This document shows, in pieces, positions 35,195 to 61,216 of a stretch of DNA of 64,000 nucleotides (its first letter is position 1; the number at the start of each line of letters is the position of its first letter). The DNA lies in IMG/VR virus record IMGVR_UViG_3300025161_000004, positions 62,001 to 126,000 of that record, one strand, 5' to 3'. The notes beneath the pieces were generated by a model. The model saw only the letters and a list, made by a program, of their open reading frames with translations. It did not search any database and was not told the origin of the DNA. Position numbers and translations under genes: made by a program.

Positions 35195-36218
35195 TTATTC
35201 TAATAGATTAAAACCGATTTTTCCATTAAATTCTTTGTGTCCGTTATAATTGTTGTAATTATAGAGTTCTGCTAAAGTATGCTCTTTATTTACTCTTATA
35301 TCAGAACCAATTCTTTCAAGAACTTTATTACACATGTCAATCGATAATCTTCCAAAATTAACTTCAGCTAACAATCTTCCTTTTCTAAACAAAGCCGTAT
35401 CAATATTTTCTTTGACATTGATAGTTGCTAAAATCTTTATCTTAAAAAGATCACCCATAATACCATCACAAACGTTTAACAGTGTAGAGATTATATTATT
35501 TGATCGCATTTTTCTATCTATAAATAGATTTTCACTATCCTCAAATATAAGAATATTGTCTTTCAAATTTTGAATTACAAAACTCATATTTCTCGGCTCA
35601 AATAAATATTGAACCATGTCTTGTGTTACGTAAACAAAATCTTTTTTAACACTCTTCACTAAATGCTTTATAAGATAGGATTTTCCAGTACCTGGGTCAC
35701 CCATAAAAATAATTAATCCGCTTTTATCCATTGATAATATTTCTTGTAATTCATTAATGGTGAAGTTAATATTATAACTATCTTCATGTAATTCAAACTT
35801 AGGTAATGTAAATGGTATCTTGTTGATATTATAATTATCTGCAACAAGAAAATATACATTATCTTTTTTTTTCTAGACTTTTCTCGAAATCAATTAACAA
35901 AGCATTAATTTTTTCTGAATTTTTAAACTTACTACAGTAAAAATGTGATATTTTAAAAGTAATCAAAATATATGATTTATATGTTTTGTGAACTAAATGT
36001 ATCTCATTACTAAAATCTAATAAAATAGAATAACCTGCATTAAGTAATTTTTGTAATAAATCAGGGTTTATCAAGTTTTCATTATTATTTTTAAATATTT
36101 TATGGAATAATGTATTATTACTATCAATATTCATCACATCAAAAATATAACGGTAGTATAAAAAACTATTATATACCCCAATATATTTAGAATCTAATTG
36201 TTTATTTGTTCGAGTCAT
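35195..36218 (-). CDS. AAA+ ATPase apparently split by a frameshift at an A9 tract (joined product about 340 aa)
   Basis: Walker A 'GDPGTGKS', Walker B 'LIFED', 'LLNVCDG', 'ATIN', 'DTALFRKGR'. The ATPase frame is open for 44 codons upstream of 35731, back to the A9 tract at 35864-35872. Deleting one A fuses it to ORF 35859..36218. Confidence 0.7.
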
Positions 36219-37197
36219 AATGTTTGTTTATTATTTTAAAACTTCCTTTACTATATTGTACTACTACACCTTCAAACGGTTTACCATATAATTCTTTTAG
36301 GTCTTCAGAATATTTTTTTATTAAATCTGGCGTTAAAATCACGTTTTCTTCAACTAATTTCACCGTAGGTAAATCCATTTCCTTTGCAACATTAAGAAAA
36401 TAAAATTGATCGCCTTTACGTGCATATCTACGTTCATCAATCAAATAAACAGAAAACATTGCCCAACCATTACTCAATTTTGAGTGTGGATTAATCTTTA
36501 TTGATTGAATACCAATACCATATGATTCACCACGAATTGAAAGAGAGATTCTATACTTTTCACTAAACTCGGTAAGTTTCCTTTCAATATCATATCTTGA
36601 GACATTATTAGTATAGTTATTTGAAATTTCTAGCTTTAATTCATGTTTCCTACCCAAAACACCAAATGTTTTTTCGACGAAATGACGGTAAAATGAATTA
36701 CTTTGACCATCAATTTTTAAAAAAATATCAACCAATTCACCATATGGTAATTCTGAATTATCTAAATTTTCCCACCTTTCTTCATCAGTTACAGGAATAC
36801 CATATGGTAATTCTCCTTTTATTGAGATATCGGTTGGTGTGGGTGGTTCATAATGACTAATCCAAAGTAGTTCTGATACATCCTCACCAACATGGTAATC
36901 TTTAATTGTTTCGGAAATTTCCTTGGGTAATGCTGTGAATGGTATAATAATACCTTCACTCCAAATATCACGAAGTTTAACCGCCTTCACTCTTTTTTGA
37001 GAATATTTTTTATATTCTTGTGCCCACTCAGAATCTGGAAATACACTATCGGGTCGAACATAAATAACTTTATCACCAACCTTAAACTGATCTCTTTTTG
37101 TGATACATTTATACCCCAATACTGTACAAATATCTAAACGATCGGCGTTCGGATGATTGATAACTTCTTTTACTACTTCAATTGTTGCATCTCTCAT
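36202..37197 (-). CDS. ATP-dependent RNA ligase, DRB0094/Rnl5-like, with N-terminal OB (tRNA-binding-like) domain
   Basis: N-terminal 'HPNADRLD...V.G......F.VGD.V.Y..PDS'; motif I 'KIDG', III 'RGE.YG.GIQ', IV 'EGVV', V 'FKII'. Confidence 0.85.
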   Translation of the reverse strand: MRDATIEVVKEVINHPNADRLDICTVLGYKCITKRDQFKVGDKVIYVRPDSVFPDSEWAQEYKKYSQKRVKAVKLRDIWSEGIIIPFTALPKEISETIKDYHVGEDVSELLWISHYEPPTPTDISIKGELPYGIPVTDEERWENLDNSELPYGELVDIFLKIDGQSNSFYRHFVEKTFGVLGRKHELKLEISNNYTNNVSRYDIERKLTEFSEKYRISLSIRGESYGIGIQSIKINPHSKLSNGWAMFSVYLIDERRYARKGDQFYFLNVAKEMDLPTVKLVEENVILTPDLIKKYSEDLKELYGKPFEGVVVQYSKGSFKIINKHYDSNK

Positions 37198-37698: not shown

Positions 37699-38802
37699 TT
37701 AGATACTAAAATTACTTTGTTTGCGTGATTTAGCCCTTAACTCGGTAACCCTACGTAATGATTCTGGATTAAATCTTTCTCTTTTAACAATACTTACCAT
37801 GTGGTGATAATTCTCTTCAGAGATAACTTGACCAACATAACCAGTGTGTTTTAATATATAACTTTTTGGTAAAGAAGCAGTTGCATCACTTGGATTACCT
37901 GTAGTATCCAAAGTAGATTCAAATGTAAGATCAAGTAATTCTTTTACTTTATCTTCAACAGACTTGGTAATATTTTTCTTGGTTTTATTCAAAGCAGTTT
38001 CTATCTTGCTAAGAACATCACCTCTATTTACTTTAGAATATTCTTCAGTAAAATACTTCTTACCACTTTTCTTATTCAACTCACTGATAATAGCAAGTGA
38101 CCCATAGCAATCACGTATAAGTCTTTCCCATACTTGTTCAGCATAGGTAAATGAAGGAAACTTATCAATCGCAACTATTTCACCATCGATCAATACAATT
38201 GTACCAATCAAGTTCTTTGGTCTTTCAAAGTGTGCAATAAACTGTTCGAGTTTCTTGTCGTACTTATTAAAATACTTATCAAGATAATATCCAGTATTGG
38301 TATTGGTATCTCTACCTAATTTTTCAATAGCAGGATATATGTTTGCATGACCAACAGTATAACCTACTTTATCAAACAACATTTCTCTCATTGAGAGAGG
38401 TATCAAACGCATTTCGTTGCCGTTTGTATCTCTGATGTAACCTGTTTGTGAACCCTGTACACAACCAGCATCATCATATCTTACAGTAGATGATTTTGGC
38501 AAGTATGCTGACTTCACCATACCGTGATTTTGTGCTGATTGTTTAGTCATTATCGCCAATTGAGTTGGCATAATAACTTCCTTGTTTGATTCATTCTTAA
38601 ATATTAAGTTACCATAACCACTATTAGATGCTTTAACATCTTTAAATGGATTAGCAAATCTTTCATCCAAAGAAAATTCCTTGTCTGTAGTTAAACAAAC
38701 CAATTGCATATTCATTATTGATTGAACAACTATGTTTCCAGACGCATCCTTTACTGGTCTGCAACCTTTCAATAATTCGACAAATTCTTTCTGTGCATTC
38801 AT
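37699..38802 (-). CDS. ARPP/DUF6569-like protein
   Basis: 'YG.L.F.N......P......K..AQNH...', 'GCVQ.SQ.G' and 'G.IVLIDGEIVAID.FPS..Y...W..L' pattern, recognised from memory as ARPP-type; 11 nt downstream of the TROVE-like gene. Confidence 0.5.
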   Translation of the reverse strand: MNAQKEFVELLKGCRPVKDASGNIVVQSIMNMQLVCLTTDKEFSLDERFANPFKDVKASNSGYGNLIFKNESNKEVIMPTQLAIMTKQSAQNHGMVKSAYLPKSSTVRYDDAGCVQGSQTGYIRDTNGNEMRLIPLSMREMLFDKVGYTVGHANIYPAIEKLGRDTNTNTGYYLDKYFNKYDKKLEQFIAHFERPKNLIGTIVLIDGEIVAIDKFPSFTYAEQVWERLIRDCYGSLAIISELNKKSGKKYFTEEYSKVNRGDVLSKIETALNKTKKNITKSVEDKVKELLDLTFESTLDTTGNPSDATASLPKSYILKHTGYVGQVISEENYHHMVSIVKRERFNPESLRRVTELRAKSRKQSNFSI

Positions 38803-38813
38803 ATTCTTAATCT

Positions 38814-40451
38814 TTAGGCTTTGACATAATTTTTTCTTATTCTTGAAACATTGTTTGCTTCAATCAATTTTACTTGATTTAACAACCACTGTTTAGTATC
38901 AACTTCAAGCATCTTAGCACTCATTTGAGTAGCAATTGATGCTGGGTTGCTCACTGCAAGTAATGCAACATTCGTGTTTGCAATTGGTCTCACATTTGCA
39001 TTCATTTCAGCACCAACGATTGGTGAAATCTGGAATATAGGTAATGATCTCTGTGTTTCATTGATATATGTTTCAATTACTTCACCTGCCAAACCTTCAT
39101 ACTGATTTTCATAACCATCAGTGATTATAAAAATTGCATCATATTTATTTTGTTCACTTTCGTTTTTCAACAGAGAAACAAATGCTGTAGCAATATCAGT
39201 TGCCTCACCTTCAGTATTTACCACAACTTGAGTTTTAGATGATTTTTCCAAAACTTTTACAGTGAAATCAGCAATTGCTCTTGGAGTATTCTTTGATTCC
39301 ACTTTATTACCGAACATTGAGTTTGATCTATCAACAATAATTCCAATATTGTTGTACGCAAAACCAGTGATCTTATTAGATTCTGCAAGTTTATCAATTG
39401 CATTAATCAATTTAGCATCAAAACCATTTTCATAGCCAGTTTTATACAATGCCATGAAATCAGTCGCAGCTTCTAAATTAACTTCCTTAACTACACCAAG
39501 TTTTTCATTTTTCTTGGTCTGTCTTACTTGCTGATTTACAGAAGTAACTTCATTGTTTTTTCTAATCAATGCAAGTGTTGATTTTCTCAACAATTTAGTT
39601 GACCACATACCAGCATATTGTGGGTGTTTCTTATTTGAAACTAAACCAACCAATACTTCTTCAGGTACTTTAGTTACTGAAGTAATATCTTGTGTTGCAA
39701 CATAAAATTCGCTGATAATTGGAAATTCACTTTTTGAATAAAATGATTTATCACCCTTACCAAAGATGAATAAAAAAATCTTGTATAATTTTTCACTATT
39801 AAGAATTGGAGAATACTTTTTAAGAAAAGTATTACTGATTTTTACCTCCTTTTCATTTGAATAAACTCCACCACTTCTAATATACTTTTCAGCAATAGAA
39901 AGAAGAATAGATGTTTTCTTTTCACCATAGACGTGTTTTAAAATATTTCTAATCTTTTTTCTATATTTAACAGAATAAAACTCTAAATTGGGATTACCCA
40001 AAATGTAACCAAGTACTATTTTTCTTGCTCTTTCGTTATTAATTTTATTCTTGCGTAATAAAATAAACAAACGAAGCACATAAGAAATACCTAAATTTTT
40101 ATCTAGATTATACAATGCACCAAGAAGTGCTTTATCTGAAATACCATTATCAATCCAATCAATAGGATTAACAATATAACATGCACCACCATTAGCTGTA
40201 TTTTTAAATTCATTCAATATAGCTTCCTGAATAAATTTACCTGTAACACCATTTTGATTTGCAAGTATCAATGGTAATTCTTTTGATGTTGAATATAATG
40301 ATGATATAGCATTTTTTATTGCAACATCTTGCTCCTCTTTAGAATGATAATATGTAGCTCCACCTCTCGCACCACTTGCAATAGAAATACCATCAATTAA
40401 TGATTTTTTTATTACTGATAATTGTTTTGCGGTTAATACTAATTGTTCCAT
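38814..40451 (-). CDS. TROVE/Ro60-like protein with C-terminal vWA (MIDAS) domain
   Basis: About 360-aa basic helical N-terminal region starting 'GGATYY'; then MIDAS 'IIVDRSNSM', 'ATDIA', 'IITDGYEN'. About 545 aa, as for Ro60. Likely ATG is at 40451. The vWA call is firm; the TROVE call is inferred. Confidence 0.6.
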   Translation of the reverse strand: MEQLVLTAKQLSVIKKSLIDGISIASGARGGATYYHSKEEQDVAIKNAISSLYSTSKELPLILANQNGVTGKFIQEAILNEFKNTANGGACYIVNPIDWIDNGISDKALLGALYNLDKNLGISYVLRLFILLRKNKINNERARKIVLGYILGNPNLEFYSVKYRKKIRNILKHVYGEKKTSILLSIAEKYIRSGGVYSNEKEVKISNTFLKKYSPILNSEKLYKIFLFIFGKGDKSFYSKSEFPIISEFYVATQDITSVTKVPEEVLVGLVSNKKHPQYAGMWSTKLLRKSTLALIRKNNEVTSVNQQVRQTKKNEKLGVVKEVNLEAATDFMALYKTGYENGFDAKLINAIDKLAESNKITGFAYNNIGIIVDRSNSMFGNKVESKNTPRAIADFTVKVLEKSSKTQVVVNTEGEATDIATAFVSLLKNESEQNKYDAIFIITDGYENQYEGLAGEVIETYINETQRSLPIFQISPIVGAEMNANVRPIANTNVALLAVSNPASIATQMSAKMLEVDTKQWLLNQVKLIEANNVSRIRKNYVKA

Positions 40452-40515
40452 AAACAAATTTTATATTTAAAAACTAATCTATGTCTTTATTTTCCGTATT
40501 TTCTTATTGATACCT

Positions 40516-40553: not shown

Positions 40554-40584
40554 AAAAAAAAGTGATGAATTTTTTACTCATCAC
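40554..40584 (-). terminator. Intrinsic terminator closing the ncRNA cluster
   Basis: GTGATGAG-TAAAAAA-TTCATCAC-TTTTTTTT. Confidence 0.75.
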
Positions 40585-40660
40585 CTCTTCAAAAATCTTG
40601 AATAATTTTATTAGGTTATATTTTGACTTACTTATACAGTAAGTATCTAAATTTCTTATT

Positions 40661-40751
40661 TAAAGGAATATTTCTTTTGTATTTTTTTGGTCGTAAAAGT
40701 GAAATTTTACAATTTAACTATTTTACTGAAAATACAAATAGTTTTCCTTTA
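40661..40751 (-). ncRNA. Structured small RNA unit A (Y-RNA-like, about 91 nt)
   Basis: Ends pair (TAAAGGAA/TTCCTTTA); internal loop; second helix TTTGTATTTT/AAAATACAAA; contains GGAAAACT-N11-CAGTAA; inner hairpin GTAAAA/TTTTAC. Confidence 0.6.
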
Positions 40752-40868
40752 ATGTCTTCAAATTAAAACCACCTATTTTAATTTTTTAATAGGAATATAC
40801 AAGTTCGATTTTTTTAATTGGTTATAACTTAAAATTTGAATCAAAAATCGTAACTTCATTATATATAG

Positions 40869-40941
40869 TAGCGAGAGCAGGATTCGAACCTGCGATCTTG
40901 TGGTTATGAGCCACACTAGTTAACCGCTTCTCTATCTCGCA
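40869..40941 (-). tRNA. tRNA-Met (CAT), initiator-like, no encoded CCA
   Basis: Cloverleaf: acceptor TGCGAGA/TCTCGCT with 1:72 mismatch, anticodon arm TGTGG-CTCATAA-CCACA, T arm GCAGG-TTCGAAT-CCTGC; 3' end ACTA; weak D stem. Confidence 0.85.
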
Positions 40942-40945
40942 ATAT

Positions 40946-41072
40946 GATTTAGGGAAAAATTTGTCAGTTATTTTTTTTGACAGATAAACACTAACACTAC
41001 TTATTAGTAAATTATCACTCTATAATAATTTAATTAAATTACTGTAATAACTTCAAGTTTTCCCATTAAATC
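40946..41072 (-). ncRNA. Structured small RNA unit B (Y-RNA-like, about 113-127 nt)
   Basis: Ends pair (GATTTA/TAAATC, GGGAAAA/TTTTCCC); upper helix AGTTATT/AATAACT; contains GGAAAACT-N11-CAGTAA. Confidence 0.6.
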
Positions 41073-41104
41073 TTTAAATAACAACCATCTGCTGTTATTT
41101 TATG

Positions 41105-41240
41105 TGGGGGAGGCAGGATTCGAACCTGCTATACTTACTATTGGATTAGTAATATGACCCAATTACTGTAAATATAATCAGTTCTCCAAAAAAGGAGTAG
41201 TTTAAATTATATTTGAAAGTATTCGTTTTACTACTCCCCC
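41105..41240 (-). ncRNA. 136-nt tRNA-like RNA (unit C) whose anticodon arm is replaced by the permuted repeat motif
   Basis: Acceptor GGGGGAG/CTCCCCC-A; D-like arm AGTA/TACT; perfect T arm GCAGG-TTCGAAT-CCTGC; central arm AAATATAAT..CTCC-T6-GGAG-AACTG-ATTATATTT then ACAGTAA; extra hairpin TTACTA/TAGTAA. Confidence 0.75.
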
Positions 41241-41250
41241 ATTTGTTTCA

Positions 41251-41281
41251 CAAAAATAAACTGTAAAATTTATCTTGTCAA
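41251..41281 (-). promoter_or_regulatory. Bacteroidota-type promoter of the ncRNA cluster
   Basis: TTG at 41281-41279, 20-nt spacer, -7 TATTTTTG at 41258-41251, about 10 nt upstream of the tRNA-like 5' end. Confidence 0.65.
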
Positions 41282-52131: not shown

Positions 52132-53160
52132 TCAATCAATATATCTATTATAAAACAATCCCATAATCCTTTCCGCAGATTTACCGTCTCCATATGGTGA
52201 TTCTTGATTAACTACATAATCATTTATGTGTTCTTCAAAAACTAATTGAAGCAGACTTGGTTCTTTAACTAAGAAAGATGTATATCCAAGTGCTTCTGGT
52301 CTTTCTGTAGTTTTCCTACATACTAAGCACTTCTTGTTTAAGAAAGAACATTCTTCCTGAATCCCACCGCTATCAGTAATAACTAATTTACATTTAATTA
52401 ATAAATTAAGTAAATTTTCATGACTTAATGGTTCAACGACTTCAATTTTTTTTAATAAATACTTGTATTTTTGTACATTAGGATTAGGGTGAATAGGCAT
52501 TATAAACCTATAATAAGGATATTTTTCAGCTAAATTATTTAGTTCAGTAAACCATTGATCCATAATATCATGATTTTCACGTCTATGCATCGTGATTAAT
52601 ATAATATCGTCATATTCACATTTTTCTTTATACCCCAATAAACTATCTAATGCAGTATTACCAACAATATATGCATTTTTGGTTATATTTTCGCTTCTTA
52701 AATTATTTAATGATTCTAATGTCGGGCATAAGTGGATATCGGCAATCTCAGATATTAATCTTCTATTAACTTCCTCAGGAAAGGGATTTTCTTTATCATA
52801 TGTTCTTAATCCAGCTTCAAGATGAATAACTTTTACTTTATTATAAAATGCAGATAAAGCAGCAGCAACTGCCGATGTTGTATCACCTTGAACTAATACA
52901 TGTGTAAATGATTTATCATTTCTTAAAATATTTGATATACCATCCATAACAGATATATACACATTCGTCAATCTGTCATCGATAATAATATCTTTTATTT
53001 GTAAAAAATAATTAGCTAAAATTTTTTCATTTTTTAAAATTTCATGTTGACCTGTTGCGACAATTTTAAATTGAATTCTATTTTGTTTAGATAGAATATC
53101 TACTAACGATTTAATCTTAATCCATTCTGGTCTTGTCCCAAATACAATCAATAATTTCAT
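52132..53160 (-). CDS. wecB: UDP-N-acetylglucosamine 2-epimerase (non-hydrolysing)
   Basis: 'GTRPE.IK', 'TGQH', 'VQGDT', 'HLEAGLRT....PFPEE.NR', 'HRREN', 'TDSGGIQEE', 'TERPE', 'PYGDG'. Confidence 0.95.
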   Translation of the reverse strand: MKLLIVFGTRPEWIKIKSLVDILSKQNRIQFKIVATGQHEILKNEKILANYFLQIKDIIIDDRLTNVYISVMDGISNILRNDKSFTHVLVQGDTTSAVAAALSAFYNKVKVIHLEAGLRTYDKENPFPEEVNRRLISEIADIHLCPTLESLNNLRSENITKNAYIVGNTALDSLLGYKEKCEYDDIILITMHRRENHDIMDQWFTELNNLAEKYPYYRFIMPIHPNPNVQKYKYLLKKIEVVEPLSHENLLNLLIKCKLVITDSGGIQEECSFLNKKCLVCRKTTERPEALGYTSFLVKEPSLLQLVFEEHINDYVVNQESPYGDGKSAERIMGLFYNRYID

Positions 53161-53948
53161 ATCATATCACTAATTATTTCAGGTAAATCCCCATCAAATT
53201 TAATTGCTTTAGACCAAGCAGATGGGTTTACTAAATGTAAATTTACACTATCTTCATTCCATTTTAACCAAACATTATTATACCATTTTTCTTTATTAAA
53301 ATCATTAGTATGACCCCAAGTATTGATTTTTTGCAGTAATTCTTCGTTAGATAACACATATGACCCATGATAACAAATTGCTACTTCATTTGGAATTAAA
53401 ATACTGTTAATCGAATCAACACCATTATTCTTAAAAGGTCTTCTCTTTGATTGGAATCTAACACCGTTCTTTAAGTTAATACAAAATTCAGGATAACCTG
53501 TTATTTTATTGCCCGAAGAATCGAGCAAAATATAATTAAATGATTTCCAAAAACAATACCAACCAATCTTATAAAGGTCAAAATTAGGATGTTTTCTTAT
53601 AAAGTTTTTTATTTTTATCCATGATTCATTAAAATAAAATTCATCCGCATCATGAATTATTAAATAATCAATACCATCTGATAATGCTAAATCAACACAA
53701 GCATTTCTTTGATCTTCTTCTCTTGCCCAAACACCTTCAATAATTTTTATTTTATCAATGAACGCTGAATCCTTGATTTGTTTCAAATCAAAAGAATTTT
53801 TATATATCTTCTTAGCATTTGGATTATAATCCCAAGGTTTATCACTATATGCAACATAAATTATATCTACATGCGGATATGCATTTTCAATGTTTCGCAT
53901 AATCCATTTATCTTGACCAAACAATAATACATGTGTAGCTATTTTCAT
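53157..53948 (-). CDS. GT-A fold glycosyltransferase-like
   Basis: 'QRN...DYLIIHDADEF' DxD motif; 'H.SYV......KI..WGH'. Confidence 0.7.
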   Translation of the reverse strand: MKIATHVLLFGQDKWIMRNIENAYPHVDIIYVAYSDKPWDYNPNAKKIYKNSFDLKQIKDSAFIDKIKIIEGVWAREEDQRNACVDLALSDGIDYLIIHDADEFYFNESWIKIKNFIRKHPNFDLYKIGWYCFWKSFNYILLDSSGNKITGYPEFCINLKNGVRFQSKRRPFKNNGVDSINSILIPNEVAICYHGSYVLSNEELLQKINTWGHTNDFNKEKWYNNVWLKWNEDSVNLHLVNPSAWSKAIKFDGDLPEIISDMI

Positions 53949-54772
53949 AAATTACTATTATATGGTATCATTAATTTTCTATCAATTCCATAAGTAATAT
54001 TTTTATTTATCTCATTCATAACATTATGTTCACATATATATTCAGAAAATAAATTTTCAAATTCAACTAATTTGTCTATATGTACACATACATGATCTGA
54101 TGGATAATAATAATCAAGATAAAAAATATAATAATTCATTTTTCTTAAAAATGTCGCTAAATCAAAACAACTATTACCAGTTTTTCTCATCTGATTTTCC
54201 TCAAATTCAATGATTATTACTGGCTTATCTCTCTCTATTGTTCTTAATCCACCCATTAAAACATTTATTTCATATCCCTGAACATCAATCTTGATTAAAT
54301 CAATTTTCGGTAATTCATATGAATCTAACGGTCTTGAACGTATCCCGTCAATAGAGTTACTATCAACTATAGTAGGTGTAAAATTACCCATATTACATAT
54401 TTCTGATGATTTAATATATGGTAGTTTCACTTTACCATTCACATCTGAACACGCCTCATTATATATTATTACATTTTCAATTTTATTATGTTTTATATTA
54501 TTACTTAATAAAGTAAAATTCTGTATCTGCGGTTCAAAAGAATATATATAACCTTTATTCTTAACTATTTCAGAAAAAAATAATGTATGATACCCAAAAT
54601 TCGCACCAATATCAACAATATTATTTATATCATATTTTTCACTATATTTCTTTACAAATTCTAATATATGTGCTTCCCATTTTTTATTTTGCCCAATTGA
54701 ATTACTTGCCATAACATCATTCTCATAATATTCAATATAAAATTTTTGATGTTTTACTATTTTAGTTTTCAT
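53945..54772 (-). CDS. FkbM-family methyltransferase
   Basis: 'DIGANFGYHT', 'FEP', 'IKIDVQGYE..VL.G', 'PVIIIE'. Confidence 0.9.
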   Translation of the reverse strand: MKTKIVKHQKFYIEYYENDVMASNSIGQNKKWEAHILEFVKKYSEKYDINNIVDIGANFGYHTLFFSEIVKNKGYIYSFEPQIQNFTLLSNNIKHNKIENVIIYNEACSDVNGKVKLPYIKSSEICNMGNFTPTIVDSNSIDGIRSRPLDSYELPKIDLIKIDVQGYEINVLMGGLRTIERDKPVIIIEFEENQMRKTGNSCFDLATFLRKMNYYIFYLDYYYPSDHVCVHIDKLVEFENLFSEYICEHNVMNEINKNITYGIDRKLMIPYNSNL

Positions 54773-55725
54773 TAACTTAAAAAAATTTGTTTGAATTTAT
54801 TCATTACCTTTTCTGGTGTATAATTATGATAACAATTCCAAGAAATCTTTTTCTGTAAAAATTCTGGATTTATCAATAAATTTAATAATTCACTCTGACT
54901 ATTATAGTATATTCCATTATTACCGAGAATATCAAAATGTGCTTTATCGATAGCATTTCTACATGTTAATATTGGTTTATTTCTAGTTGAGAACTCACCA
55001 ATAGCCAATCCAAATGATTCACCCTTATGTCTTGCATGTATCATTGCATCACATGTATTTATGAATTTAACTTTCGTATATAAATCAGCAGTACCGTCTA
55101 AATATATGATATTTTTATATTTAGAATCACTAAATCTTTGAGTGTTCATAAATAAAAAATACAAATCAGGTTTTTTTATTGCTGCTTGTTTCACTGCTTC
55201 TTTAGCATAGGCAATATCAAACGTTTCATAGCCACCATATCTACCATAAACAATAGCATTATCTGGTATATTAAGTTCTTGACGCATATTATCATTATGT
55301 TCTGGTAAGTCTATCATATGTGGTACAAATGGATGACGATAACCATATAACCTACTCAACCATTCAGAAACATATGCATATACATTTCCGTGTGGTTCTT
55401 CATATTGGAAAACAGCATGTACTACTGTTTTATGTTTTTTTGAAATAACATCATCAATATAACCTGCCTTAAGAGTGTAAAATACGTCAGCCCGATAAGC
55501 ATCTAAGATTTCTTCTATTTGTTTTACATTATCATAAAAAATAACATCAAATCTATTTTTAAATTTTTCAATAGCTTTTTCATTAGAATATCTCCAAATA
55601 CTGGGATTCTTAGTTAGAATTATACTTTTATTGCCAAGTAATACTTCATTATGATGTGCATAATCATACATGGCAACCTCAGTACCTCTTAATGATAGTT
55701 GATTAGTGTGAAATACAATATTCAT
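54772..55725 (-). CDS. GT-B fold glycosyltransferase
   Basis: 'RGTEVAMYDYA', 'GRYGG', 'CDAMIHAR..GESFGLAIGE'. Confidence 0.8.
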   Translation of the reverse strand: MNIVFHTNQLSLRGTEVAMYDYAHHNEVLLGNKSIILTKNPSIWRYSNEKAIEKFKNRFDVIFYDNVKQIEEILDAYRADVFYTLKAGYIDDVISKKHKTVVHAVFQYEEPHGNVYAYVSEWLSRLYGYRHPFVPHMIDLPEHNDNMRQELNIPDNAIVYGRYGGYETFDIAYAKEAVKQAAIKKPDLYFLFMNTQRFSDSKYKNIIYLDGTADLYTKVKFINTCDAMIHARHKGESFGLAIGEFSTRNKPILTCRNAIDKAHFDILGNNGIYYNSQSELLNLLINPEFLQKKISWNCYHNYTPEKVMNKFKQIFLS

Positions 55726-56366
55726 TATTTTAATATTTTACATAAAATAAAATCACCACCATTATTCCATTTATCTTCTCTGATATGTTGTTCATATACT
55801 ATTTCGGTATTACATAACATTTTTAAATGTTCATAAAACGGATAATGAGATGCATCATCAATTAAAACAAAAGTACCATCTTTGAATCTATTAAAACAAT
55901 GAAGAAAAGCTAAACTTCTACCGTTACCATGAGGGCCATCCACAATAACTAAATCTATTGTTTCAGGTAACATACTTTCATTAATCTTATAGAATGTATT
56001 TTTTTGTCTTGTATGTGACGGAGTTAATTTATCTCTCATTTTAGATTCATCATATTTTTTATTAATAAACATACTTTCAAACGTATTATCGTCAGTATCA
56101 ACCAACGATATGATACTAAGAAGTAAGTTCTCATCGTGTCCTTTATATGCATATTCTATTGAATCATCAAAAGAGTAAATTTTAAAACGAGATGAATGTA
56201 TGGTATTAAAATCAATTAAAAACTCTGTCGATATTCCAGATCCAAACTCAACGATATTTAATTCTCTATCATTATTTTTTGATAAAAAATCATATAGTAA
56301 TTCAAATTCTTTTCTGGATAAACCCCAACCATCATTCTTATATTTTTCTAAATTCACCATATACAA
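55725..56366 (-). CDS. Class I SAM-dependent methyltransferase-like
   Basis: 'VEFGSGIST', 'DLVIVDGP..GR', 'LIDD'. Confidence 0.75.
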   Translation of the reverse strand: MYMVNLEKYKNDGWGLSRKEFELLYDFLSKNNDRELNIVEFGSGISTEFLIDFNTIHSSRFKIYSFDDSIEYAYKGHDENLLLSIISLVDTDDNTFESMFINKKYDESKMRDKLTPSHTRQKNTFYKINESMLPETIDLVIVDGPHGNGRSLAFLHCFNRFKDGTFVLIDDASHYPFYEHLKMLCNTEIVYEQHIREDKWNNGGDFILCKILK

Positions 56367-57076
56367 GTTTTATTTAATGTTTCTGCACCTTTAAGATAGT
56401 TTCTGGTCAATTTTAATCCTAACATTTTATCAAGTGTTGATCCAATATCAATATATGTATTTTTCTTATTAAATTTCCAAAACTCATATGTTATTATATT
56501 TGCAAGAGGACCTGCGGCAATTAAATATATGTAGTTATTCATATTATATTCACTAATATCCATCATCAATTTTTGGATTAACTGGCTACTGTTAACCCAT
56601 GCATCTATCCCTATTGGATAGAATTGTTCAACGTTAAATGGTAAATTTTCAGGTTTACTTTTATTATTTGCTATCAAAATTATTTTTTTCTCTTTTAATA
56701 CAGGAATTAATTCTGAAAGAAAATATTTATAATTCGAATTAACAAATATATTAGCCCAAGTTAAATTTTCTTCTGGTTGACCAGATAATTTTTTCATATA
56801 TTCAAATTTTTCTTTACCAACACAACATCGACACGCAATACCTATATAATAATTATCATCTACATACTTATATGAGTTTAACAAAATTTCACGCATCTTA
56901 ACATGTATTTGGCTTTTTGGGTCATACATAAATTCACCATCACCTTTATGTCTAATATCAATAAATTTATTCTCAAGAATCATTAATTCACCATCACCCC
57001 ATCTTGACAATGCAAAATGTTCATTATTTTTTAGTTTATTTAAAAAATGATCAAAATCGCCCTTAAACGTTTTCAT
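56354..57076 (-). CDS. GT-D fold (DUF1792-like) glycosyltransferase-like protein
   Basis: 'SRWGDGE', 'AAGPLA', 'IDIGS' motifs; likely start MKTFK at 57076. Confidence 0.55.
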   Translation of the reverse strand: MKTFKGDFDHFLNKLKNNEHFALSRWGDGELMILENKFIDIRHKGDGEFMYDPKSQIHVKMREILLNSYKYVDDNYYIGIACRCCVGKEKFEYMKKLSGQPEENLTWANIFVNSNYKYFLSELIPVLKEKKIILIANNKSKPENLPFNVEQFYPIGIDAWVNSSQLIQKLMMDISEYNMNNYIYLIAAGPLANIITYEFWKFNKKNTYIDIGSTLDKMLGLKLTRNYLKGAETLNKTCIW

Positions 57077-57077
57077 A

Positions 57078-57707
57078 TTATTTAACAAATTTCGATATTA
57101 TAAATCCACAATTACTTACGCTATCTTTTAATGGGGTTCTTTCAATAAATTTTGTTACTTTAGCATCTGCCCATGATCTAGCAATTTCACATTGGGGTGG
57201 TTTTACTGTGAAGTAATCATGACTCCATATAATAAAATCATTTTGTGCATTTTTCTCCATTAATTCAAGTTCTGTTTTCACATGATGATATTCATGATTA
57301 CCATCTTGAATAATGAAGTCAAAATCAAACGATTTACTTAAAAAATTCAATGAATTATCAATTACTCTCTTAAAATTTTTACTATGTAATTTATCATATT
57401 CTAATCGTTCCATTATATCAAGTAATGTCACTTCACCATAACCATTCATATCCACAGCTTGTAGTACATGATTAGTTGTACCTCTACCAAGGTAATTACC
57501 GATTTCAAGTATATGTCTAGGTTTAAGATATCGAATTATCACATATATAAATTTCCCTTCACTTTCCCATGCAGAACCACTCGGTTCTTCAGGATATCCA
57601 CTATACTTTGATTCATCATAATATTTAACAAAATCATCCAATGATATTCCAAATAGCTTATTAGTGGCATCAAAATAAGATTTAATAAAGTCTTGTTTTT
57701 TATCCAT
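57078..57707 (-). CDS. Class I SAM-dependent methyltransferase-like (Methyltransf_24-type)
   Basis: 'ILEIG...G', 'DFIIQDGNHEY..V..E', 'HD'; likely start MDKKQ at 57707. Confidence 0.7.
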   Translation of the reverse strand: MDKKQDFIKSYFDATNKLFGISLDDFVKYYDESKYSGYPEEPSGSAWESEGKFIYVIIRYLKPRHILEIGNYLGRGTTNHVLQAVDMNGYGEVTLLDIMERLEYDKLHSKNFKRVIDNSLNFLSKSFDFDFIIQDGNHEYHHVKTELELMEKNAQNDFIIWSHDYFTVKPPQCEIARSWADAKVTKFIERTPLKDSVSNCGFIISKFVK

Positions 57708-57723
57708 AATTTTATTATTTATT

Positions 57724-58386
57724 TTAATCAACCCATCCTCTATTACCAGCATTTTTATGAGTATATCCCATTAATTCTGATAATGTTATATTATAATTAT
57801 AATCAGTATGTATATATTTTTTTTCTAATACATTTAATTTTTTATCATTTATAACACTATATAAAAATACTTCTGGTGATATTGAATTTCTAATATCTCT
57901 ATGAATATTATTTTCATCATTAAAAAGTTTTAAATTACCAAAAACCTCTTCAGCACCATTTTTAGAAATAAAAAACACTTCCATCAAATAATAATTATCA
58001 CCGTATAATGTTGTTGGTAATGGCTTACGACATATAGCATCATATTTTTTGTTAATAATTAAATTTATATTGTCATAAAATACTTTTTTTGCATTTTCAG
58101 TGTTAACTAAAGAGACATCATCATGAGAAAAAATAATAACATCTGGATTATATTTTATTGATGCTTGCATTGTAGTGATACAGCCATTAACGCAGCCTAT
58201 TTTATGTGATATTCCTTCAAACTTTATATATTCAATATTACTAAACTGTTTTAACGTTTCTTTTGGGTTCTGATTATTATATCCGATAATAGAATATGAA
58301 TCAGGAAATAATTCTTTTTCTATTTTCACCGTATTGTAGAGTGTATTAAATCTATTATAAACATTATGTGCGAATACTATTCTCAT
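57724..58386 (-). CDS. GT-A-like glycosyltransferase
   Basis: 'HNVYNR' N-terminus, 'IIFSHDD'; cluster context. Confidence 0.5.
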   Translation of the reverse strand: MRIVFAHNVYNRFNTLYNTVKIEKELFPDSYSIIGYNNQNPKETLKQFSNIEYIKFEGISHKIGCVNGCITTMQASIKYNPDVIIFSHDDVSLVNTENAKKVFYDNINLIINKKYDAICRKPLPTTLYGDNYYLMEVFFISKNGAEEVFGNLKLFNDENNIHRDIRNSISPEVFLYSVINDKKLNVLEKKYIHTDYNYNITLSELMGYTHKNAGNRGWVD

Positions 58387-58387
58387 G

Positions 58388-59113
58388 TTAATTATTAACT
58401 ATTTTCCAACCTCTTTTAATACATTCAATTACAATTGAATCTCTTAATGGGATATGAGATTTCATCAACCATGATGCATTTTTATCACTACCAACAGTTC
58501 GACCATACTCAGGAACACAACTCCAAATATTTCTGTTATTTTCTGGATGAGGAGGAACATATGTGTTTATATTAGCATATTTTTGTAATAAATATGAAAA
58601 CATGATATCTTCTCCATTATCCCACGATACTGGTTGTTCATACCATAAATATTTTGCCCATTCCTGCTTAAAAAACCAACAATGACCGACTAAATCTACT
58701 CTTTCAATGTTATTACTATGTATACCATTCCAACCAAATTTTACATGTCCACTATATGATTTACTACTATTAAGTAATACACCACTTGCACCGTATAATC
58801 CTTCATTCTTTTCAATACACTCCACACAATTTTTAAACCAATCTTTATATGGTAGAATATCATCATCAAATATTGCAACATATTTTGTTTTACATAACAA
58901 TGAAATTGTAAATCTTCCATAAAATTTGGTATTCCAATTACATTGATAAGTTTTTATTTTTTTATCTGTTGGAAGTTGTTGTGGAACATCACCATTATTA
59001 TACCATACATGAATATTTTCACTCAAAACGGGTATTGATTGATTTTTTATTGCTTGAATCTGTTGCTCAAGTTTATCTGGTCTTTTATATACATTTAAAA
59101 TTACGCTAATCAT
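58388..59113 (-). CDS. GT2-like glycosyltransferase
   Basis: 'ISVILNVYKRP', 'IFDDD', 'GEDI'. Confidence 0.75.
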   Translation of the reverse strand: MISVILNVYKRPDKLEQQIQAIKNQSIPVLSENIHVWYNNGDVPQQLPTDKKIKTYQCNWNTKFYGRFTISLLCKTKYVAIFDDDILPYKDWFKNCVECIEKNEGLYGASGVLLNSSKSYSGHVKFGWNGIHSNNIERVDLVGHCWFFKQEWAKYLWYEQPVSWDNGEDIMFSYLLQKYANINTYVPPHPENNRNIWSCVPEYGRTVGSDKNASWLMKSHIPLRDSIVIECIKRGWKIVNN

Positions 59114-59114
59114 A

Positions 59115-60164
59115 TTAATCGAAAGTTATATCACTTAAATCTCTATCCGTATCATATTTATTCTCACCATCAATAAATTTTTTTGTGTAAGATTTTTTTG
59201 TTTTTCTTGCAATCTCATTAAGTTTTGAATCAAAATTACCATCGTGCCAAACCAATGAATTAGGCATTCTATATACTTTCACACCAAAGGTTTTAATATG
59301 TTGAACTATTGTATCCCAAAAAAACGTACTGGTATATGTTGCAATTTTTTTTATTCCTATATCAACATAGTGATCAAAAAATTTTAAAAATCTATTATCG
59401 AATAATGTTCCACCATCAATAGCAATTGATTGACCATCATACCACCAATCAGGTTGAGGTTTGTCCTTTAAATACCCATATATGTGATAACTAAATACCA
59501 TATATGAATTATCCATTTCTTTCACTCTGAAAAACTCATCCATTAAAATATTCAAAAAATTATCACATAAAATAAAATCATCATCAATCTGTAAAAACCC
59601 ATGACACTTATACTGTTTACCAACACTCCAAAGTTTATTTACTGTTTTCCAATAATTTTTTTTTCCACCATTAATATCATTTTTTAAATAAATAATATCT
59701 GGAAATTCGATTTGTAAATTATCATATCTAATATCATTAGAGCCGTCATTAATTAAACAAAATTTAAACGTATACTTAGTTTTTTGAGTAAAAAGTTGTT
59801 TTAATATTCTTCTAATTTTATTATATCTATTGTATGATGCAACACAAATTACTACATCGTAATCTACATCTTTTTCTTTTACGTAATATCCATAATCTCT
59901 TAACGTTACAGGTACATCAGATACAATGTTTACTTTTGCCGTATTTTGTTTATTAGAAGCTAAATTTCCAATTCTCTGACTTAATCTAGGATGTGTATTT
60001 TGTCTTATTTTATCTTCAATTTTAACTGATTTTGGTGGTTCATTTCTCATCTTTTTTTCAAAATAATTATCGACATGTGTTTTGCCTATAATGATTTTCT
60101 TTTTATCATTAGTTAATTCGATCTTACGTTTTATCACCCTCTTAATATCCAGTTTTTTTGCCAT
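59115..60164 (-). CDS. GT2-like glycosyltransferase with basic N-terminal extension
   Basis: 'SYNR', 'INDGS', 'QIDDD', 'SLVWH'. Confidence 0.75.
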   Translation of the reverse strand: MAKKLDIKRVIKRKIELTNDKKKIIIGKTHVDNYFEKKMRNEPPKSVKIEDKIRQNTHPRLSQRIGNLASNKQNTAKVNIVSDVPVTLRDYGYYVKEKDVDYDVVICVASYNRYNKIRRILKQLFTQKTKYTFKFCLINDGSNDIRYDNLQIEFPDIIYLKNDINGGKKNYWKTVNKLWSVGKQYKCHGFLQIDDDFILCDNFLNILMDEFFRVKEMDNSYMVFSYHIYGYLKDKPQPDWWYDGQSIAIDGGTLFDNRFLKFFDHYVDIGIKKIATYTSTFFWDTIVQHIKTFGVKVYRMPNSLVWHDGNFDSKLNEIARKTKKSYTKKFIDGENKYDTDRDLSDITFD

Positions 60165-60805: not shown

Positions 60806-61216
60806 CTATAATTCTATGTTAATATTTACACAATTATTATTTTCTATCAAATAAATAATATCATCAGGTATCGTATTATTTTCTATAATAAAATAATTTG
60901 GCACTATCCTTATTACTAAACTCTGATAATATTTATCAGACAAATTATTTGTAACAAAATCAATTAACTTAGGACTAACCAACACATTTACATCATATCG
61001 TATTACTTCACCATCAATACTTTTAATTGATAGTCCTTGTTCTTTTAATGTTATACTTGATAATTCATTTAATGCATTTATTATTGTAGATAAAAATAAA
61101 TAATCATTATCATCATCTTCTATAAAATTATTAAAAAATATACTACTAAACTTCTGTTTACATTTTAAAGTTTTATGGAGAACAAAATCATCAATATCAA
61201 TCTTTTCTTCTATCAT
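60806..61216 (-). CDS. Hypothetical protein (136 aa)
   Basis: ORF abutting the GT2 gene. Confidence 0.6.
   Translation of the reverse strand: MIEEKIDIDDFVLHKTLKCKQKFSSIFFNNFIEDDDNDYLFLSTIINALNELSSITLKEQGLSIKSIDGEVIRYDVNVLVSPKLIDFVTNNLSDKYYQSLVIRIVPNYFIIENNTIPDDIIYLIENNNCVNINIEL

What the first reader, a model, noticed from the sequence alone, without database searches (positions are those of the whole stretch)
40661..41187. Three copies of GGARAACT-N11-CAGTAA with exact spacing and compensating partner strands
Minus-strand copies are GGAAAACT-ATTTGTATTTT-CAGTAA (40747-40723), GGAAAACT-TGAAGTTATTA-CAGTAA (41063-41039) and GGAGAACT-GATTATATTTA-CAGTAA (41187-41163). The N11 spacers differ, but each has its own complementary strand nearby (AAAATACAAA, AATAACT, AAATATAAT). 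GGAA/GGAG is matched by TTCC/CTCC, a compensatory change. Each copy gives the same architecture: short G-C helix, asymmetric loop around AACT, A-U helix, then single-stranded CAGUAA. Structure conserved over sequence suggests a protein-binding RNA module, analogous to the bulged Ro-binding stem of Y RNAs (inference).
Basis: seen in the sequence. Interest (0 to 1): 0.85.

Follow-up and report, generated by a model that had tools for sequence, protein, structure and literature searches.

The report
Ro60 handle on phage tRNA-like RNAs
The three repeats are the conserved strand of a small RNA helix that tags a row of tRNA-like RNAs encoded directly beside a huge phage's own, very divergent Ro60 RNA-binding protein, so they are most likely that protein's docking sites: a new and unusually elaborate form of the Ro60/Y-RNA partnership.

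Summary
There are exactly three copies of GGARAACT-N11-CAGTAA, against none in shuffles, and each has its own complementary partner strand. All three lie in one about 725-nt non-coding transcription unit on the minus strand. Copy 3 sits inside a tRNA-like gene. Copies 1 and 2 are 5' leaders that pair with 3' trailers around decayed tRNA bodies.

In 111 related loci from huge phages the motif recurs 420 times, always on the gene strand, as R4-AACU-N4-GU-K-UUU-W-CAGUAA. The helix shows strong covariation. It is attached to tRNA bodies in three topologies: at the acceptor end, at the variable region of circularly permuted tRNAs, and inside the D-loop. It also occurs on short non-tRNA bodies.

The gene immediately downstream encodes 547 aa and has no Pfam hit. 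It folds as Ro60 (TROVE ring plus vWA), and its 13 best PDB matches are all Ro60. Motif arrays and this gene co-occur almost perfectly, even in a phage whose Ro-like protein is only 27% identical.

Best reading (0.62): a phage Y-RNA-like family whose shared handle docks Ro60. The main rival is a cut-and-rejoin or processing signal for interrupted tRNAs. I rate it a new variant of a known kind. Binding has not been tested.

The parts
41253..41281 (-). Sigma-70-like promoter (TTGACA-17-TATTTT) 12 nt upstream of the first unit. It is the likely start of the array transcript.
   Evidence: The site is conserved in L002 and L027. It is a consensus match only.
41105..41240 (-). Unit A (I-type). A tRNA-like RNA with a 7-bp GC-rich acceptor stem and a canonical T arm. 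A module hairpin of about 79 nt replaces the normal D-loop/anticodon region. It contains motif copy 3.
   Evidence: Rfam tRNA hit of 34 bits (gathering score 29) with a 79-nt insert. Fold z-score -4.3. In the alignment of 36 orthologues, 16 of 30 pairs show compensatory changes.
41163..41187 (-). Motif copy 3: the 3' arm of the Unit A module hairpin (P1 GGAG, AACU, P2 AUUAUAUUU, CAGUAA).
41194..41214 (-). Partner strand of copy 3: P2' AAAUAUAAU at 41206-41214 and P1' CUACUCC at 41194-41200. The loop U6 is at 41188-41193. The same CUACUCC is also complementary to the tRNA's own 5' end (GGAGUAGU).
41076..41101 (-). Stable hairpin between units A and B, with a 10-bp stem. Its role is unknown.
   Evidence: It is conserved in L002 and L027.
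40949..41066 (-). Unit B (T-type, decayed body). The leader carries motif copy 2 (41039-41063, plus G at 41064). It pairs with the trailer: P2' AAUAACU at 40966-40972 and P1' UUUUCCC at 40952-40958. In L002, L003 and L027 the same unit encloses a 76-nt tRNA.
   Evidence: (z-score -5.0).
40868..40941 (-). Ordinary tRNA-Met(CAU) embedded in the array, without a handle.
   Evidence: ARAGORN. Rfam 58.6 bits.
40661..40750 (-). Unit C (T-type, body deleted). The leader carries motif copy 1 (40723-40747). The trailer has P2' AAAAUACAAA at 40676-40685 and P1' UAUUCC at 40665-40670. Only an acceptor-like stem (GUAAAA/UUUUAC) followed by GACCA remains of the tRNA that L002 and L027 have at this position.
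40600..40658 (-). Unit D: a decayed fourth unit (S-type). Its leader reads UAAGAAAU...CUGUAU where relatives have GAAGAACU...CAGUAU.
   Evidence: Alignment with L002, L003 and L027.
40556..40590 (-). Intrinsic-terminator-like hairpin plus U-run that closes the array.
   Evidence: 1 found against 0.0 expected.
38814..40457 (-). Divergent Ro60/Rsr homologue of 547 aa, with an N-terminal helical-repeat ring and a C-terminal vWA domain carrying an invariant DxSxS MIDAS motif. It is the proposed protein partner of the handle.
   Evidence: No Pfam or PHROG hit. Atlas neighbours are TROVE/vWA_Ro60 clusters, TM 0.56-0.66. AF2 model with pLDDT 76. The top 13 Foldseek PDB hits are all Ro60/Rsr/TROVE, E 1e-5 to 8e-4. 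Invariant D374, S376 and S378.
37699..38802 (-). ARPP-1 domain protein directly after the Ro60-like gene. The same gene pair occurs in LR756500.1.
36202..37197 (-). ATP-dependent RNA ligase (OB fold plus RNA_ligase domain) 1.6 kb further downstream. It gives the locus an RNA-repair context.

Best explanation
The three copies are the sequence-conserved 5' strand of an irregular RNA helix, here called the handle.

Anatomy of the handle:
- P1 is a purine-rich strand paired to a pyrimidine-rich strand.
- A5 often lies in a purine-purine mismatch, and A6 pairs with U.
- C7 is never opposite G, and U8 pairs with A.
- A small internal loop follows, then P2 containing the conserved GU-K-UUU, and then the CAGUAA box.

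The handle is the only element shared by a family of 4-7 small RNAs. They are encoded as one array immediately upstream of a divergent phage Ro60 gene and in the same orientation.

I propose (inferred) that the handle is the docking site for that Ro60. Each unit would then be a Y-RNA analogue with a Ro60-binding stem plus a variable second domain. In this clade the second domain is usually a tRNA or tRNA mimic, joined to the handle at one of three places:
- at its acceptor end (window copies 1 and 2);
- at its variable region, in circularly permuted tRNAs of relatives;
- within its D-loop (window copy 3).

By analogy with Ro60/Y-RNA particles, the tRNA-like domain would tether Ro60 to tRNA-handling factors. 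Alternatively it would present tRNA-like substrates or decoys to the phage's RNA-repair enzymes (ligase, CCA-adding enzyme, phosphoesterases). This step is speculative.

Shown: the motif, the helix, the topologies, the Ro60 fold of the neighbouring gene, and the genomic linkage.
Inferred: physical binding and the downstream function.
For: 1. Motif. There are 3 exact copies and 0 in shuffles. In 111 loci (893 kb) there are 420 PWM hits, all on the gene strand.

2. Helix.
- RNAalifold recovers P1 and P2 independently in three unit types.
- In the I-type hairpins 95.4% of cells pair, against 41-54% for slid controls. 59 cells carry double-sided changes, and 0 of 500 shuffles reach these values.
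- P1 positions 1-4 switch between G-C and A-U across unit types together with their partners. C7 faces C, A or U, and U8 faces A.

3. Conservation sits on the 5' strand. The opposing loop strand differs between types: ACGAAU, UAAAC, AAAA, CUCAN. Ro60 is reported to contact mainly the 5' strand of Y RNA (PMC4201824).

4. The neighbouring 547-aa ORF is a Ro60 homologue by structure and has an invariant MIDAS motif.

5. Linkage.
- 79 of 80 Ro-anchored loci carry arrays. All 359 motifs lie 207-3193 nt upstream on the same strand.
- Ten helicase-anchored relatives with the Ro-like gene have arrays, and nine without it have none.
- In a motif-first scan, 53 of 74 assessable loci have the Ro-like gene downstream. 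The remaining 21 are isolated matches in coding-like sequence.
- LR756500.1 has a Ro-like protein only 27% identical, yet it still has three motif units upstream.

6. Precedent. YrlA Y RNAs lie within 4 kb of rsr on the same strand. They carry a 5' Ro motif and a tRNA-like domain ordered T arm, closed acceptor, D arm. This is the order found in the P-type units here. Phage phiLo has two Y-like RNAs upstream of its Ro60.

7. In the window the tRNA bodies of copies 1 and 2 have decayed while the 25-nt motif is intact. Copy 2 matches L002 at 24 of 25 positions. This points to selection on the handle itself.

8. The bodies do not look like ordinary decoders. U33 is present in only 72-78%, and the anticodon triplet takes 10-11 different values among orthologues.
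Against: - No binding or expression data exist. I found no clear RNA run. The one 255-nt contig in run X7 is of unknown library type.
- The motif does not match the published Ro-binding consensus, GNCGAAN0-1G or CGAA in bacteria and phages and GGUCCGA in animals.
- No Rfam family other than tRNA matches.
- The Ro-like protein is very divergent: about 13% identity to solved Ro60s and TM 0.3-0.46.
- Many relatives' units are good tRNAs, up to 58 bits. 23 of 32 P-type units keep N-CCA after the acceptor 3' strand. This would also fit RNAs that are matured into working tRNAs.
- Genomic linkage cannot say which protein of the locus binds the handle.
Confidence: 0.62

Rival explanations
1. The handle is a cut-and-rejoin (splicing) signal. 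An endonuclease would cut both strands of the helix and the phage RNA ligase would seal the products. This would remove the D-loop insert (copy 3 type) and join the two halves of the permuted tRNAs. It would be a phage counterpart of archaeal and algal bulge-helix-bulge processing, possibly carried out on the Ro60 particle.
For: - The same helix sits exactly where a tRNA is interrupted (I-type) or where a permuted tRNA's ends lie (P-type). This range of positions mirrors BHB-dependent disrupted tRNA genes (PMC3978253).
- N-CCA is kept in 23 of 32 P-type units.
- The window encodes an RNA ligase, a HAD 'Swiss army knife' phosphatase, a weak CPDase-like protein and a CCA-adding enzyme.
Against: - The geometry is not 3-nt bulge, 4-bp helix, 3-nt bulge.
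- On the 5' side of I-type inserts, 12-20 unstructured A-rich nt separate the D-stem from the helix, and no conserved element marks the site.
- The distance from CAGUAA to the body varies: 0-6 nt and more.
- No splicing-endonuclease domain appears among about 50 window ORFs scanned.
- The handle also flanks normal-order tRNAs, short non-tRNA bodies and decayed bodies, where rejoining serves no evident purpose.
- Some P-type acceptors are closed by only 6 nt.
- The insert-less allele in L027 is an imprecise genomic deletion, not a clean exon junction.
- Anticodon loops are often non-canonical.
Confidence: 0.12
2. The handle is an ordinary leader-trailer processing stem. A host double-strand RNase, or RNase P/Z acting on the bodies, would use it to release each unit from the polycistronic array transcript. 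Ro60 would play no specific part.
For: - One promoter-like site and one terminator bracket the array, so the units must be separated after transcription.
- Leader-trailer pairing around stable RNAs is the classical RNase III arrangement (established knowledge of rRNA operons and phage T7 transcripts).
Against: - Double-strand RNases do not need about 17 nearly invariant nucleotides on one strand.
- The I-type version is an internal hairpin inside a tRNA, not a flank.
- The tRNA-Met in the same array has no handle.
- The tight phyletic coupling to the Ro-like gene is left unexplained.
Confidence: 0.1
3. The handle docks a different protein of the conserved locus, for example the ARPP-1 protein that always follows the Ro-like gene, the RNA ligase, or the 999-aa CCA-adding fusion, rather than Ro60 itself.
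For: - The Ro-like/ARPP-1 gene pair is conserved even in LR756500.1.
- The ligase and other RNA-repair genes lie nearby.
- Linkage analysis cannot separate co-inherited neighbours.
Against: - ARPP has no known RNA-binding role. It is predicted to act on sugar moieties (PMC9503650).
- Ro60 is the only protein of the locus whose family is known to use partner RNAs encoded next to it.
Confidence: 0.08
4. The motif acts at the DNA level (a promoter or operator for each small gene), or it is the core of an unrecognised self-cleaving ribozyme.
For: - The bipartite spacing is fixed and the orientation is strict.
- tRNA-linked ribozymes are known in phages (own knowledge, not tested here).
Against: - Partner strands 50-130 nt away covary with the motif, which requires a transcript.
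- One copy type lies inside a tRNA.
- The motif is absent from the other 63 kb of the window.
- The strand opposite the conserved bases is not conserved between unit types, unlike a catalytic core.
- No ribozyme family matches, even at E up to 10.
Confidence: 0.05

Closest known systems
Bacterial and phage YrlA-type Y RNAs with Rsr/Ro60 (Chen et al. 2014, PMC4201824)
   Same: - They are encoded within a few kb of the Ro60 gene on the same strand.
- A stem carries a conserved motif on the 5' strand.
- The second domain mimics tRNA. The order T arm, closed acceptor stem-loop, D arm is the same as in the P-type units of relatives.
- There are several RNAs per locus.
   Different: - The motif here is R4-AACU...GU-K-UUU-W-CAGUAA, not GNCGAAN0-1G.
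- No YrlA-like Rfam hit was obtained.
- The handle sits at the variable-arm, acceptor or D-loop position, not at the anticodon-stem position.
- The bodies keep a complete anticodon-like arm and often N-CCA.
- Arrays hold 4-7 units.
- The Ro60 is too divergent for the Pfam TROVE model.
Thermus phage phiLo Ro60 with Yrl1/Yrl2 (PMC12135203)
   Same: A phage-encoded Ro60 has its partner RNAs directly upstream of the gene. Binding and RYPER-like complexes were shown there.
   Different: The phiLo RNAs were found through a CGAA motif in a stem-bulge-stem. There are two RNAs, and they are not described as tRNA-like in the passages I read. Here the motif, copy number and tRNA topologies all differ, and nothing has been tested biochemically.
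Metazoan Y RNAs (bulged conserved helix GGUCCGA bound by Ro60)
   Same: The architecture is an irregular helix in which an unpaired or mismatched C lies between two paired segments. It is read mainly on the 5' strand and attached to a variable effector domain.
   Different: There is no sequence similarity. Animal Y RNAs have no tRNA-like domain. They are single Pol III genes, not an array.
Circularly permuted and intron-containing tRNA genes processed through bulge-helix-bulge motifs (Cyanidioschyzon, some archaea; PMC3978253)
   Same: The gene order is 3' half, linker, 5' half, with leader and trailer that pair. Inserts occur at non-canonical tRNA positions. One shared helix marks every discontinuity.
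   Different: The helix is not a BHB, no splicing endonuclease was found, and the junction positions are not fixed. The same helix also flanks intact, non-tRNA and decayed bodies. I found no report of such genes in bacteria or phages.

Membership tests
Y RNA (Ro60-associated ncRNA) | Encoded close to a Ro60/Rsr gene, on the same strand | tested here: met
   The array ends 99 nt upstream of the Ro60-like ORF. All 359 motif instances in 79 of 80 loci lie 207-3193 nt upstream on the same strand.
Y RNA (Ro60-associated ncRNA) | A stem formed by distant 5' and 3' segments that carries a conserved protein-binding motif, chiefly on the 5' strand | tested here: met
   Leader-trailer helix with covariation. 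Conservation is on the 5' strand. In copy 3 the stem is a closed hairpin, a permuted form.
Y RNA (Ro60-associated ncRNA) | Physical association with Ro60 | not testable with these tools
   This needs EMSA or immunoprecipitation. Only genomic linkage is available.
YrlA subfamily | GNCGAAN0-1G (CGAA) motif near the 5' end | tested here: not met
   The family consensus is RRRRAACU-N4-GU-K-UUU-W-CAGUAA. There is no CGAA in the three window leaders.
YrlA subfamily | tRNA-like domain with T arm, closed acceptor-like stem-loop and D arm, with the Ro stem continuing the anticodon stem | tested here: inconclusive
   The P-type units of relatives have T arm, closed acceptor and D arm in that order. They also have a separate anticodon-like arm, and the handle sits at the variable position. 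In the window, unit A keeps the acceptor and T arm, and units B and C are decayed.
YrlA subfamily | Match to a curated covariance model | tested here: not met
   Only tRNA, with weak tmRNA-like hits, was found at E up to 5-10. I could not confirm that Rfam 15 holds a YrlA model, so this is weak evidence.
Ro60/Rsr protein (for the neighbouring ORF) | TROVE helical-repeat ring followed by a vWA domain with a MIDAS motif | tested here: met
   The AF2 model has helices over residues 8-358 and an alpha/beta domain over 368-532. The top 13 PDB matches are all Ro60/Rsr/TROVE. D374-x-S376-x-S378 is invariant. The Pfam TROVE model itself does not hit.
BHB-dependent tRNA intron / permuted tRNA | Bulge(3)-helix(4)-bulge(3) at both cut sites | tested here: not met
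   The helix is P1 (4-7 bp), A5 mismatch, A6-U, C7 mismatch, U8-A, a small loop, then P2 (7-10 bp). There is no second, symmetric bulge.
BHB-dependent tRNA intron / permuted tRNA | Splicing endonuclease (EndA/Sen family) encoded or available | tested here: not met
   No such Pfam domain appears among the about 50 window ORFs scanned. The rest of the 247-kb genome and the host were not examined.
BHB-dependent tRNA intron / permuted tRNA | Spliced or circular RNA junctions | not testable with these tools
   No RNA run holding the locus was identified, and the read-laying output showed no joints.
tRNA (for unit A, which contains copy 3) | Cloverleaf with a 7-bp acceptor, T arm, D arm, and a 5-bp/7-nt anticodon arm | tested here: inconclusive
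   The Rfam tRNA score is 34 bits, above the gathering score of 29, but only with a 79-nt insert. ARAGORN does not call it. The acceptor and T arm are canonical. The anticodon region is replaced by a 5-bp stem with an 8-nt loop.
Known self-cleaving ribozymes | Match to a ribozyme covariance model | tested here: not met
   No match at E up to 10 in the window region or at E up to 5 in seven relatives.

The most novel reading that the evidence does not exclude
The handle marks the sites where a phage-encoded RNP cuts and reseals RNA. The RNP would be Ro60-like protein plus the neighbouring Rnl-type ligase and end-healing enzymes. Huge phages would then assemble working tRNAs from circularly permuted and D-loop-interrupted genes. 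This would be a protein-dependent tRNA splicing and permutation system in the bacterial world, evolved independently of the archaeal/eukaryal BHB endonuclease. It would also give Ro60 a direct role in RNA joining.
Probability: 0.12. Interest if true: 0.9.

Novelty: new variant of a known kind. Interest (0 to 1): 0.68.

Why it matters
Ro60 and its Y RNAs are conserved from bacteria to humans, yet what the RNA's second domain does is still unclear. Only a few bacterial and phage examples have been studied.

This clade of uncultured huge phages (200-460 kb) offers a natural series. One docking helix is fused to tRNA bodies in three different topologies, to mini-bodies and to decaying bodies. The anticodon loops are hypervariable, and a full RNA-repair gene set lies alongside.

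Four consequences follow:
- It gives a new, testable recognition motif for a Ro60 lineage that profile searches miss.
- It shows circularly permuted tRNA-shaped genes in phages. I found no report of these.
- It suggests that Ro60 particles in phages are tied to the conflict over tRNA cleavage and repair.
- The motif can serve as a simple marker for annotating such loci in metagenomes.

Tried and rejected
- **Known RNA families.** Rfam at gathering and at permissive thresholds gave only tRNA, plus weak permuted-tmRNA-like hits on the P-type units.
- **Close relatives among deposited phages.** blastn found only tRNA-Met matches. tblastn of the Ro-like protein found one uncultured 462-kb phage.
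- **BHB reading.** I tried to fit bulge-helix-bulge by hand on several units. It fits some copies (3-nt AAC bulge, 3-bp helix, 5-nt bulge) but not the family-wide pairing statistics.
- **Duplex energies.** Leader versus flank energies were too noisy in this AT-rich DNA: real -11.9 against shuffled -10.2 kcal/mol. I replaced them with anchored pairing and alignment-based covariation.
- **Expression evidence.** Two run searches and one read-laying run gave no usable RNA evidence.
- **Sequence-only search of the Ro-like protein.** Neither the single sequence nor a 24-sequence profile hit anything among PDB chains. Only structure comparison worked.
- **BFVD fold search.** The hits were unnamed and added nothing.
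- **Promoter reading.** Rejected, because the motif is absent from the rest of the window and covaries with distant partner strands.
- **Literature.** Searches for permuted tRNAs or BHB introns in phages found nothing relevant.
Full report
**1. The observation.** The pattern GGARAACT-N11-CAGTAA occurs exactly three times in the 64-kb window, at the stated minus-strand positions. None of 100 dinucleotide-preserving shuffles contains it. For copies 1 and 2 the partners lie downstream, so leader and trailer enclose a body. For copy 3 they lie upstream, so the module is a closed hairpin with a U6 loop. A fourth, decayed copy follows at 40634-40658.

**2. Local context.**
- The window is part of a 247-kb IMG/VR contig. 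It is 28% G+C, and all its genes are on the minus strand.
- The three copies lie in a 900-nt gap between a DnaB-like helicase gene and a 547-aa ORF.
- The gap has one promoter-like site (41281-41253) and one terminator-like hairpin (40590-40556).
- In between, in order: a tRNA-like gene with a 79-nt insert that contains copy 3 (Rfam tRNA, 34 bits); a hairpin; the unit with copy 2; a normal tRNA-Met; the unit with copy 1; and the decayed fourth unit.

**3. What the copies belong to.** Relatives were fetched through the helicase (31 loci) and through the 547-aa protein (80 loci).
- In L002, L003 and L027, ARAGORN calls tRNAs that begin at the AGTAA of the motif, and the sequence after each tRNA pairs with the leader. 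Copies 1 and 2 are therefore leaders of leader-tRNA-trailer units.
- In the window itself these tRNA bodies are scrambled (copy 2) or largely deleted (copy 1), while the 25-nt motif is intact.
- A position-weight scan of all 111 loci (893 kb) finds 420 instances, all on the gene strand, 255 of them unique. The consensus is R1-R4, A5 A6 C7 U8, four variable bases, G13 U14, K, U16-U18, W, C20 A21 G22 U23 A24 A25.
- Among 263 unique units I distinguish five types:
  - T-type: normal tRNA between leader and trailer (51 units).
  - P-type: circularly permuted tRNA-like body (55 units).
  - I-type: module hairpin inside the D-loop region of a tRNA (49 units).
  - S1 and S2: two short non-tRNA types (41 and 39 units).
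  - The remaining 28 units were left unclassified.

**4. The helix is real.**
- RNAalifold on 42 I-type hairpins predicts P1 and P2, and 8 of 14 pairs show double-sided changes.
- With the A6-U and U8-A pairs added, 95.4% of cells pair, against 41-54% when partners are slid by 1-3 columns. 59 cells carry compensatory changes, and no shuffle of 500 reaches the observed values.
- S1 units show the same helix, with G-C to A-U covariation in P2.
- P-type units fold into leader-trailer helix, T arm, closed acceptor stem, D stem and anticodon-like stem. 22 of 35 pairs are supported by compensatory changes.
- Full I-type units fold into acceptor, module hairpin, anticodon and T arms, with 16 of 30 pairs supported.
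- Across types, P1 positions 1-4 change between G-C and A-U together with their partners. A5 is often in a purine-purine mismatch. A6 pairs with U. C7 is almost never opposite G. U8 mostly pairs with A. The opposing loop strand is type-specific.
- The module is thus an irregular helix whose sequence conservation lies on one strand.

**5. The neighbouring gene.**
- The 547-aa ORF that starts 99 nt after the terminator has no Pfam, PHROG or PDB-sequence match.
- Its nearest ESM-Atlas clusters by features and by structure include TROVE/vWA_Ro60 families, with TM 0.56-0.66 over 380 residues.
- An AlphaFold2 model built from 24 homologues (pLDDT 76) shows a helical-repeat region followed by an alpha/beta domain.
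- Its 13 best Foldseek matches in the PDB are all Ro60, Rsr or TROVE structures, aligned over the full length (E 1e-5 to 8e-4). They include the Ro60 of Thermus phage phiLo.
- The family keeps an invariant D-x-S-x-S motif.
- The next gene encodes an ARPP-1 domain protein, and an RNA ligase follows 1.6 kb on.
- Elsewhere the window encodes a HAD 'Swiss army knife' phosphatase, a weak CPDase-like protein and a 999-aa CCA-adding fusion.

**6. Linkage between motif and Ro60-like gene.**
- In 79 of 80 Ro-anchored loci the array is present. The exception has under 1 kb of upstream sequence.
- All 359 motif instances lie 207-3193 nt upstream on the same strand. None lies in the gene or in the 4 kb after it.
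- Among helicase-anchored relatives, the ten with the Ro-like gene have arrays. The nine with at least about 3 kb downstream but no Ro-like gene have none.
- A motif-first scan of IMG/VR returned 116 further loci. Of the 74 with enough downstream sequence, 53 have the Ro-like gene. The other 21 are single matches in coding-looking sequence with no array.
- In LR756500.1, a 462-kb uncultured phage, the Ro-like protein is only 27% identical and is again followed by ARPP-1. Three motif units lie within 3 kb upstream.

**7. Interpretation.**
- Published work places bacterial and phage Y RNAs within about 4 kb of the Ro60 gene on the same strand. They have a short conserved motif near the 5' end and a tRNA-like domain, and Ro60 contacts mainly the 5' strand (PMC4201824).
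- Phage phiLo has two Y-like RNAs upstream of its Ro60 that bind it (PMC12135203).
- A comparative survey noted TROVE proteins with a tRNA-like partner in some jumbo phages (PMC7824862).
- The array here fits that pattern, so the handle is most simply the docking site for the phage Ro60.
- Three things differ from the known cases: the motif itself, the number of units, and the attachment of the handle at three different points of a tRNA.
- The bodies do not look like ordinary decoders. U33 is present in only 72-78%, and the anticodon triplet takes 10-11 different values among orthologues.
- In the window, two bodies have decayed while their handles are intact.

**8. The main rival** is that the handle marks sites of cutting and rejoining.
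- For it: the handle sits at every discontinuity. N-CCA is kept in 23 of 32 P-type units. A ligase and end-healing enzymes are encoded nearby.
- Against it: the helix is not a bulge-helix-bulge. The 5' side of I-type inserts has no conserved element. Distances to the body vary. No splicing endonuclease domain was found. The handle also flanks intact, non-tRNA and decayed bodies.
- The two readings are not exclusive, because a Ro60 particle could be the platform for processing.
- I give lower weight to a plain processing stem, a different protein partner, a DNA element or a ribozyme.

**9. Limits.** Nothing here shows binding or expression. The only possibly RNA-derived datum is one 255-nt contig, depth 45, in a small run of unknown type. 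It covers 40947-41201 only and shows no joints. I could not verify that Rfam holds a YrlA model. The rest of the 247-kb genome was not examined.

Noticed in passing
Loci L037, L039, L041 and others (alignment A4); for example L004:6277-6423: Circularly permuted tRNA-shaped genes occur in huge phages. Their order is T arm, acceptor 3' strand, N-CCA, a 3-6 nt linker, acceptor 5' strand, D arm, anticodon-like arm. All five helices are supported by covariation. I found no report of permuted tRNA genes in phages or bacteria.
   Followed up: partly
window 41194-41200 against 41230-41237; alignment A5: In I-type units the partner strand of the handle also carries a 6-8 nt Watson-Crick complement to the tRNA's own 5' end (GGAGUAGU/ACUACUCC in the window). 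It is present in 28 of 36 orthologues, with a mean length of 6.3 nt against 3.95 in shuffles. This suggests two mutually exclusive folds, that is, a possible switch.
   Followed up: partly
Alignments A4, A5, A7 (relatives): The anticodon loops of the tRNA-like bodies are hypervariable among orthologues, while the stems are conserved. U33 is missing in 22-28%. Triplets include UCA and UUA (suppressor-like), and A34-starting triplets. This could reflect decoy or conflict-driven evolution.
   Followed up: partly
window 37699-38802 (-); L112:6197-7234: An ARPP-1 domain protein directly follows the Ro60-like gene, both here and in the distant phage LR756500.1. A Ro60-ARPP gene pair is not among the ARPP contexts listed in PMC9503650.
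   Followed up: partly
window 36202-37197, 6263-6829, 6834-7214, 9285-12284 (all -): The window carries an RNA-repair toolkit: an Rnl-type RNA ligase with an OB domain, a HAD 'Swiss army knife' phosphatase, a small protein with a borderline fungal tRNA-ligase CPDase match (22 bits against a cut-off of 23), and a 999-aa protein with a C-terminal CCA-adding enzyme and an uncharacterised N-terminal half.
   Followed up: no
window 40947-41201: Run X7 (15 Mb, library type unknown) holds a single 255-nt contig at depth 45. It covers only the stretch from the middle of the copy-3 hairpin to the end of the copy-2 trailer and nothing else of the 1-kb region. It might be a stable RNA species or an assembly artefact.
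   Followed up: no
L027:5066-5137 compared with L002:5741-5876: One close relative lacks the 68-nt module insert in the first tRNA-like gene. The junction is an imprecise deletion that reuses a duplicated UAAACAC segment. It is not a clean intron loss.
   Followed up: partly
L023:~7400-8450: In one relative the I-type unit is split by an insertion of about 1 kb that looks protein-coding, lying between the tRNA 5' part and the module hairpin.
   Followed up: no
window 19830-22667 (-): The SNF2-family helicase gene appears to carry an intein (Intein_splicing domain over residues 569-878; PHROG similarity to an intein-bearing reductase).
   Followed up: no
window 52132-62157 (-): There is a long run of glycosyltransferase, methyltransferase and UDP-GlcNAc 2-epimerase genes, an unusually large sugar-modification cluster for a phage.
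   Followed up: no
L009, L012, L018, L022, L029 (tRNA-Met calls of 84-90 nt): Several relatives have tRNA-Met genes that ARAGORN reports as 84-90 nt long. They may carry an insertion or a long extra arm. I did not inspect them.
   Followed up: no
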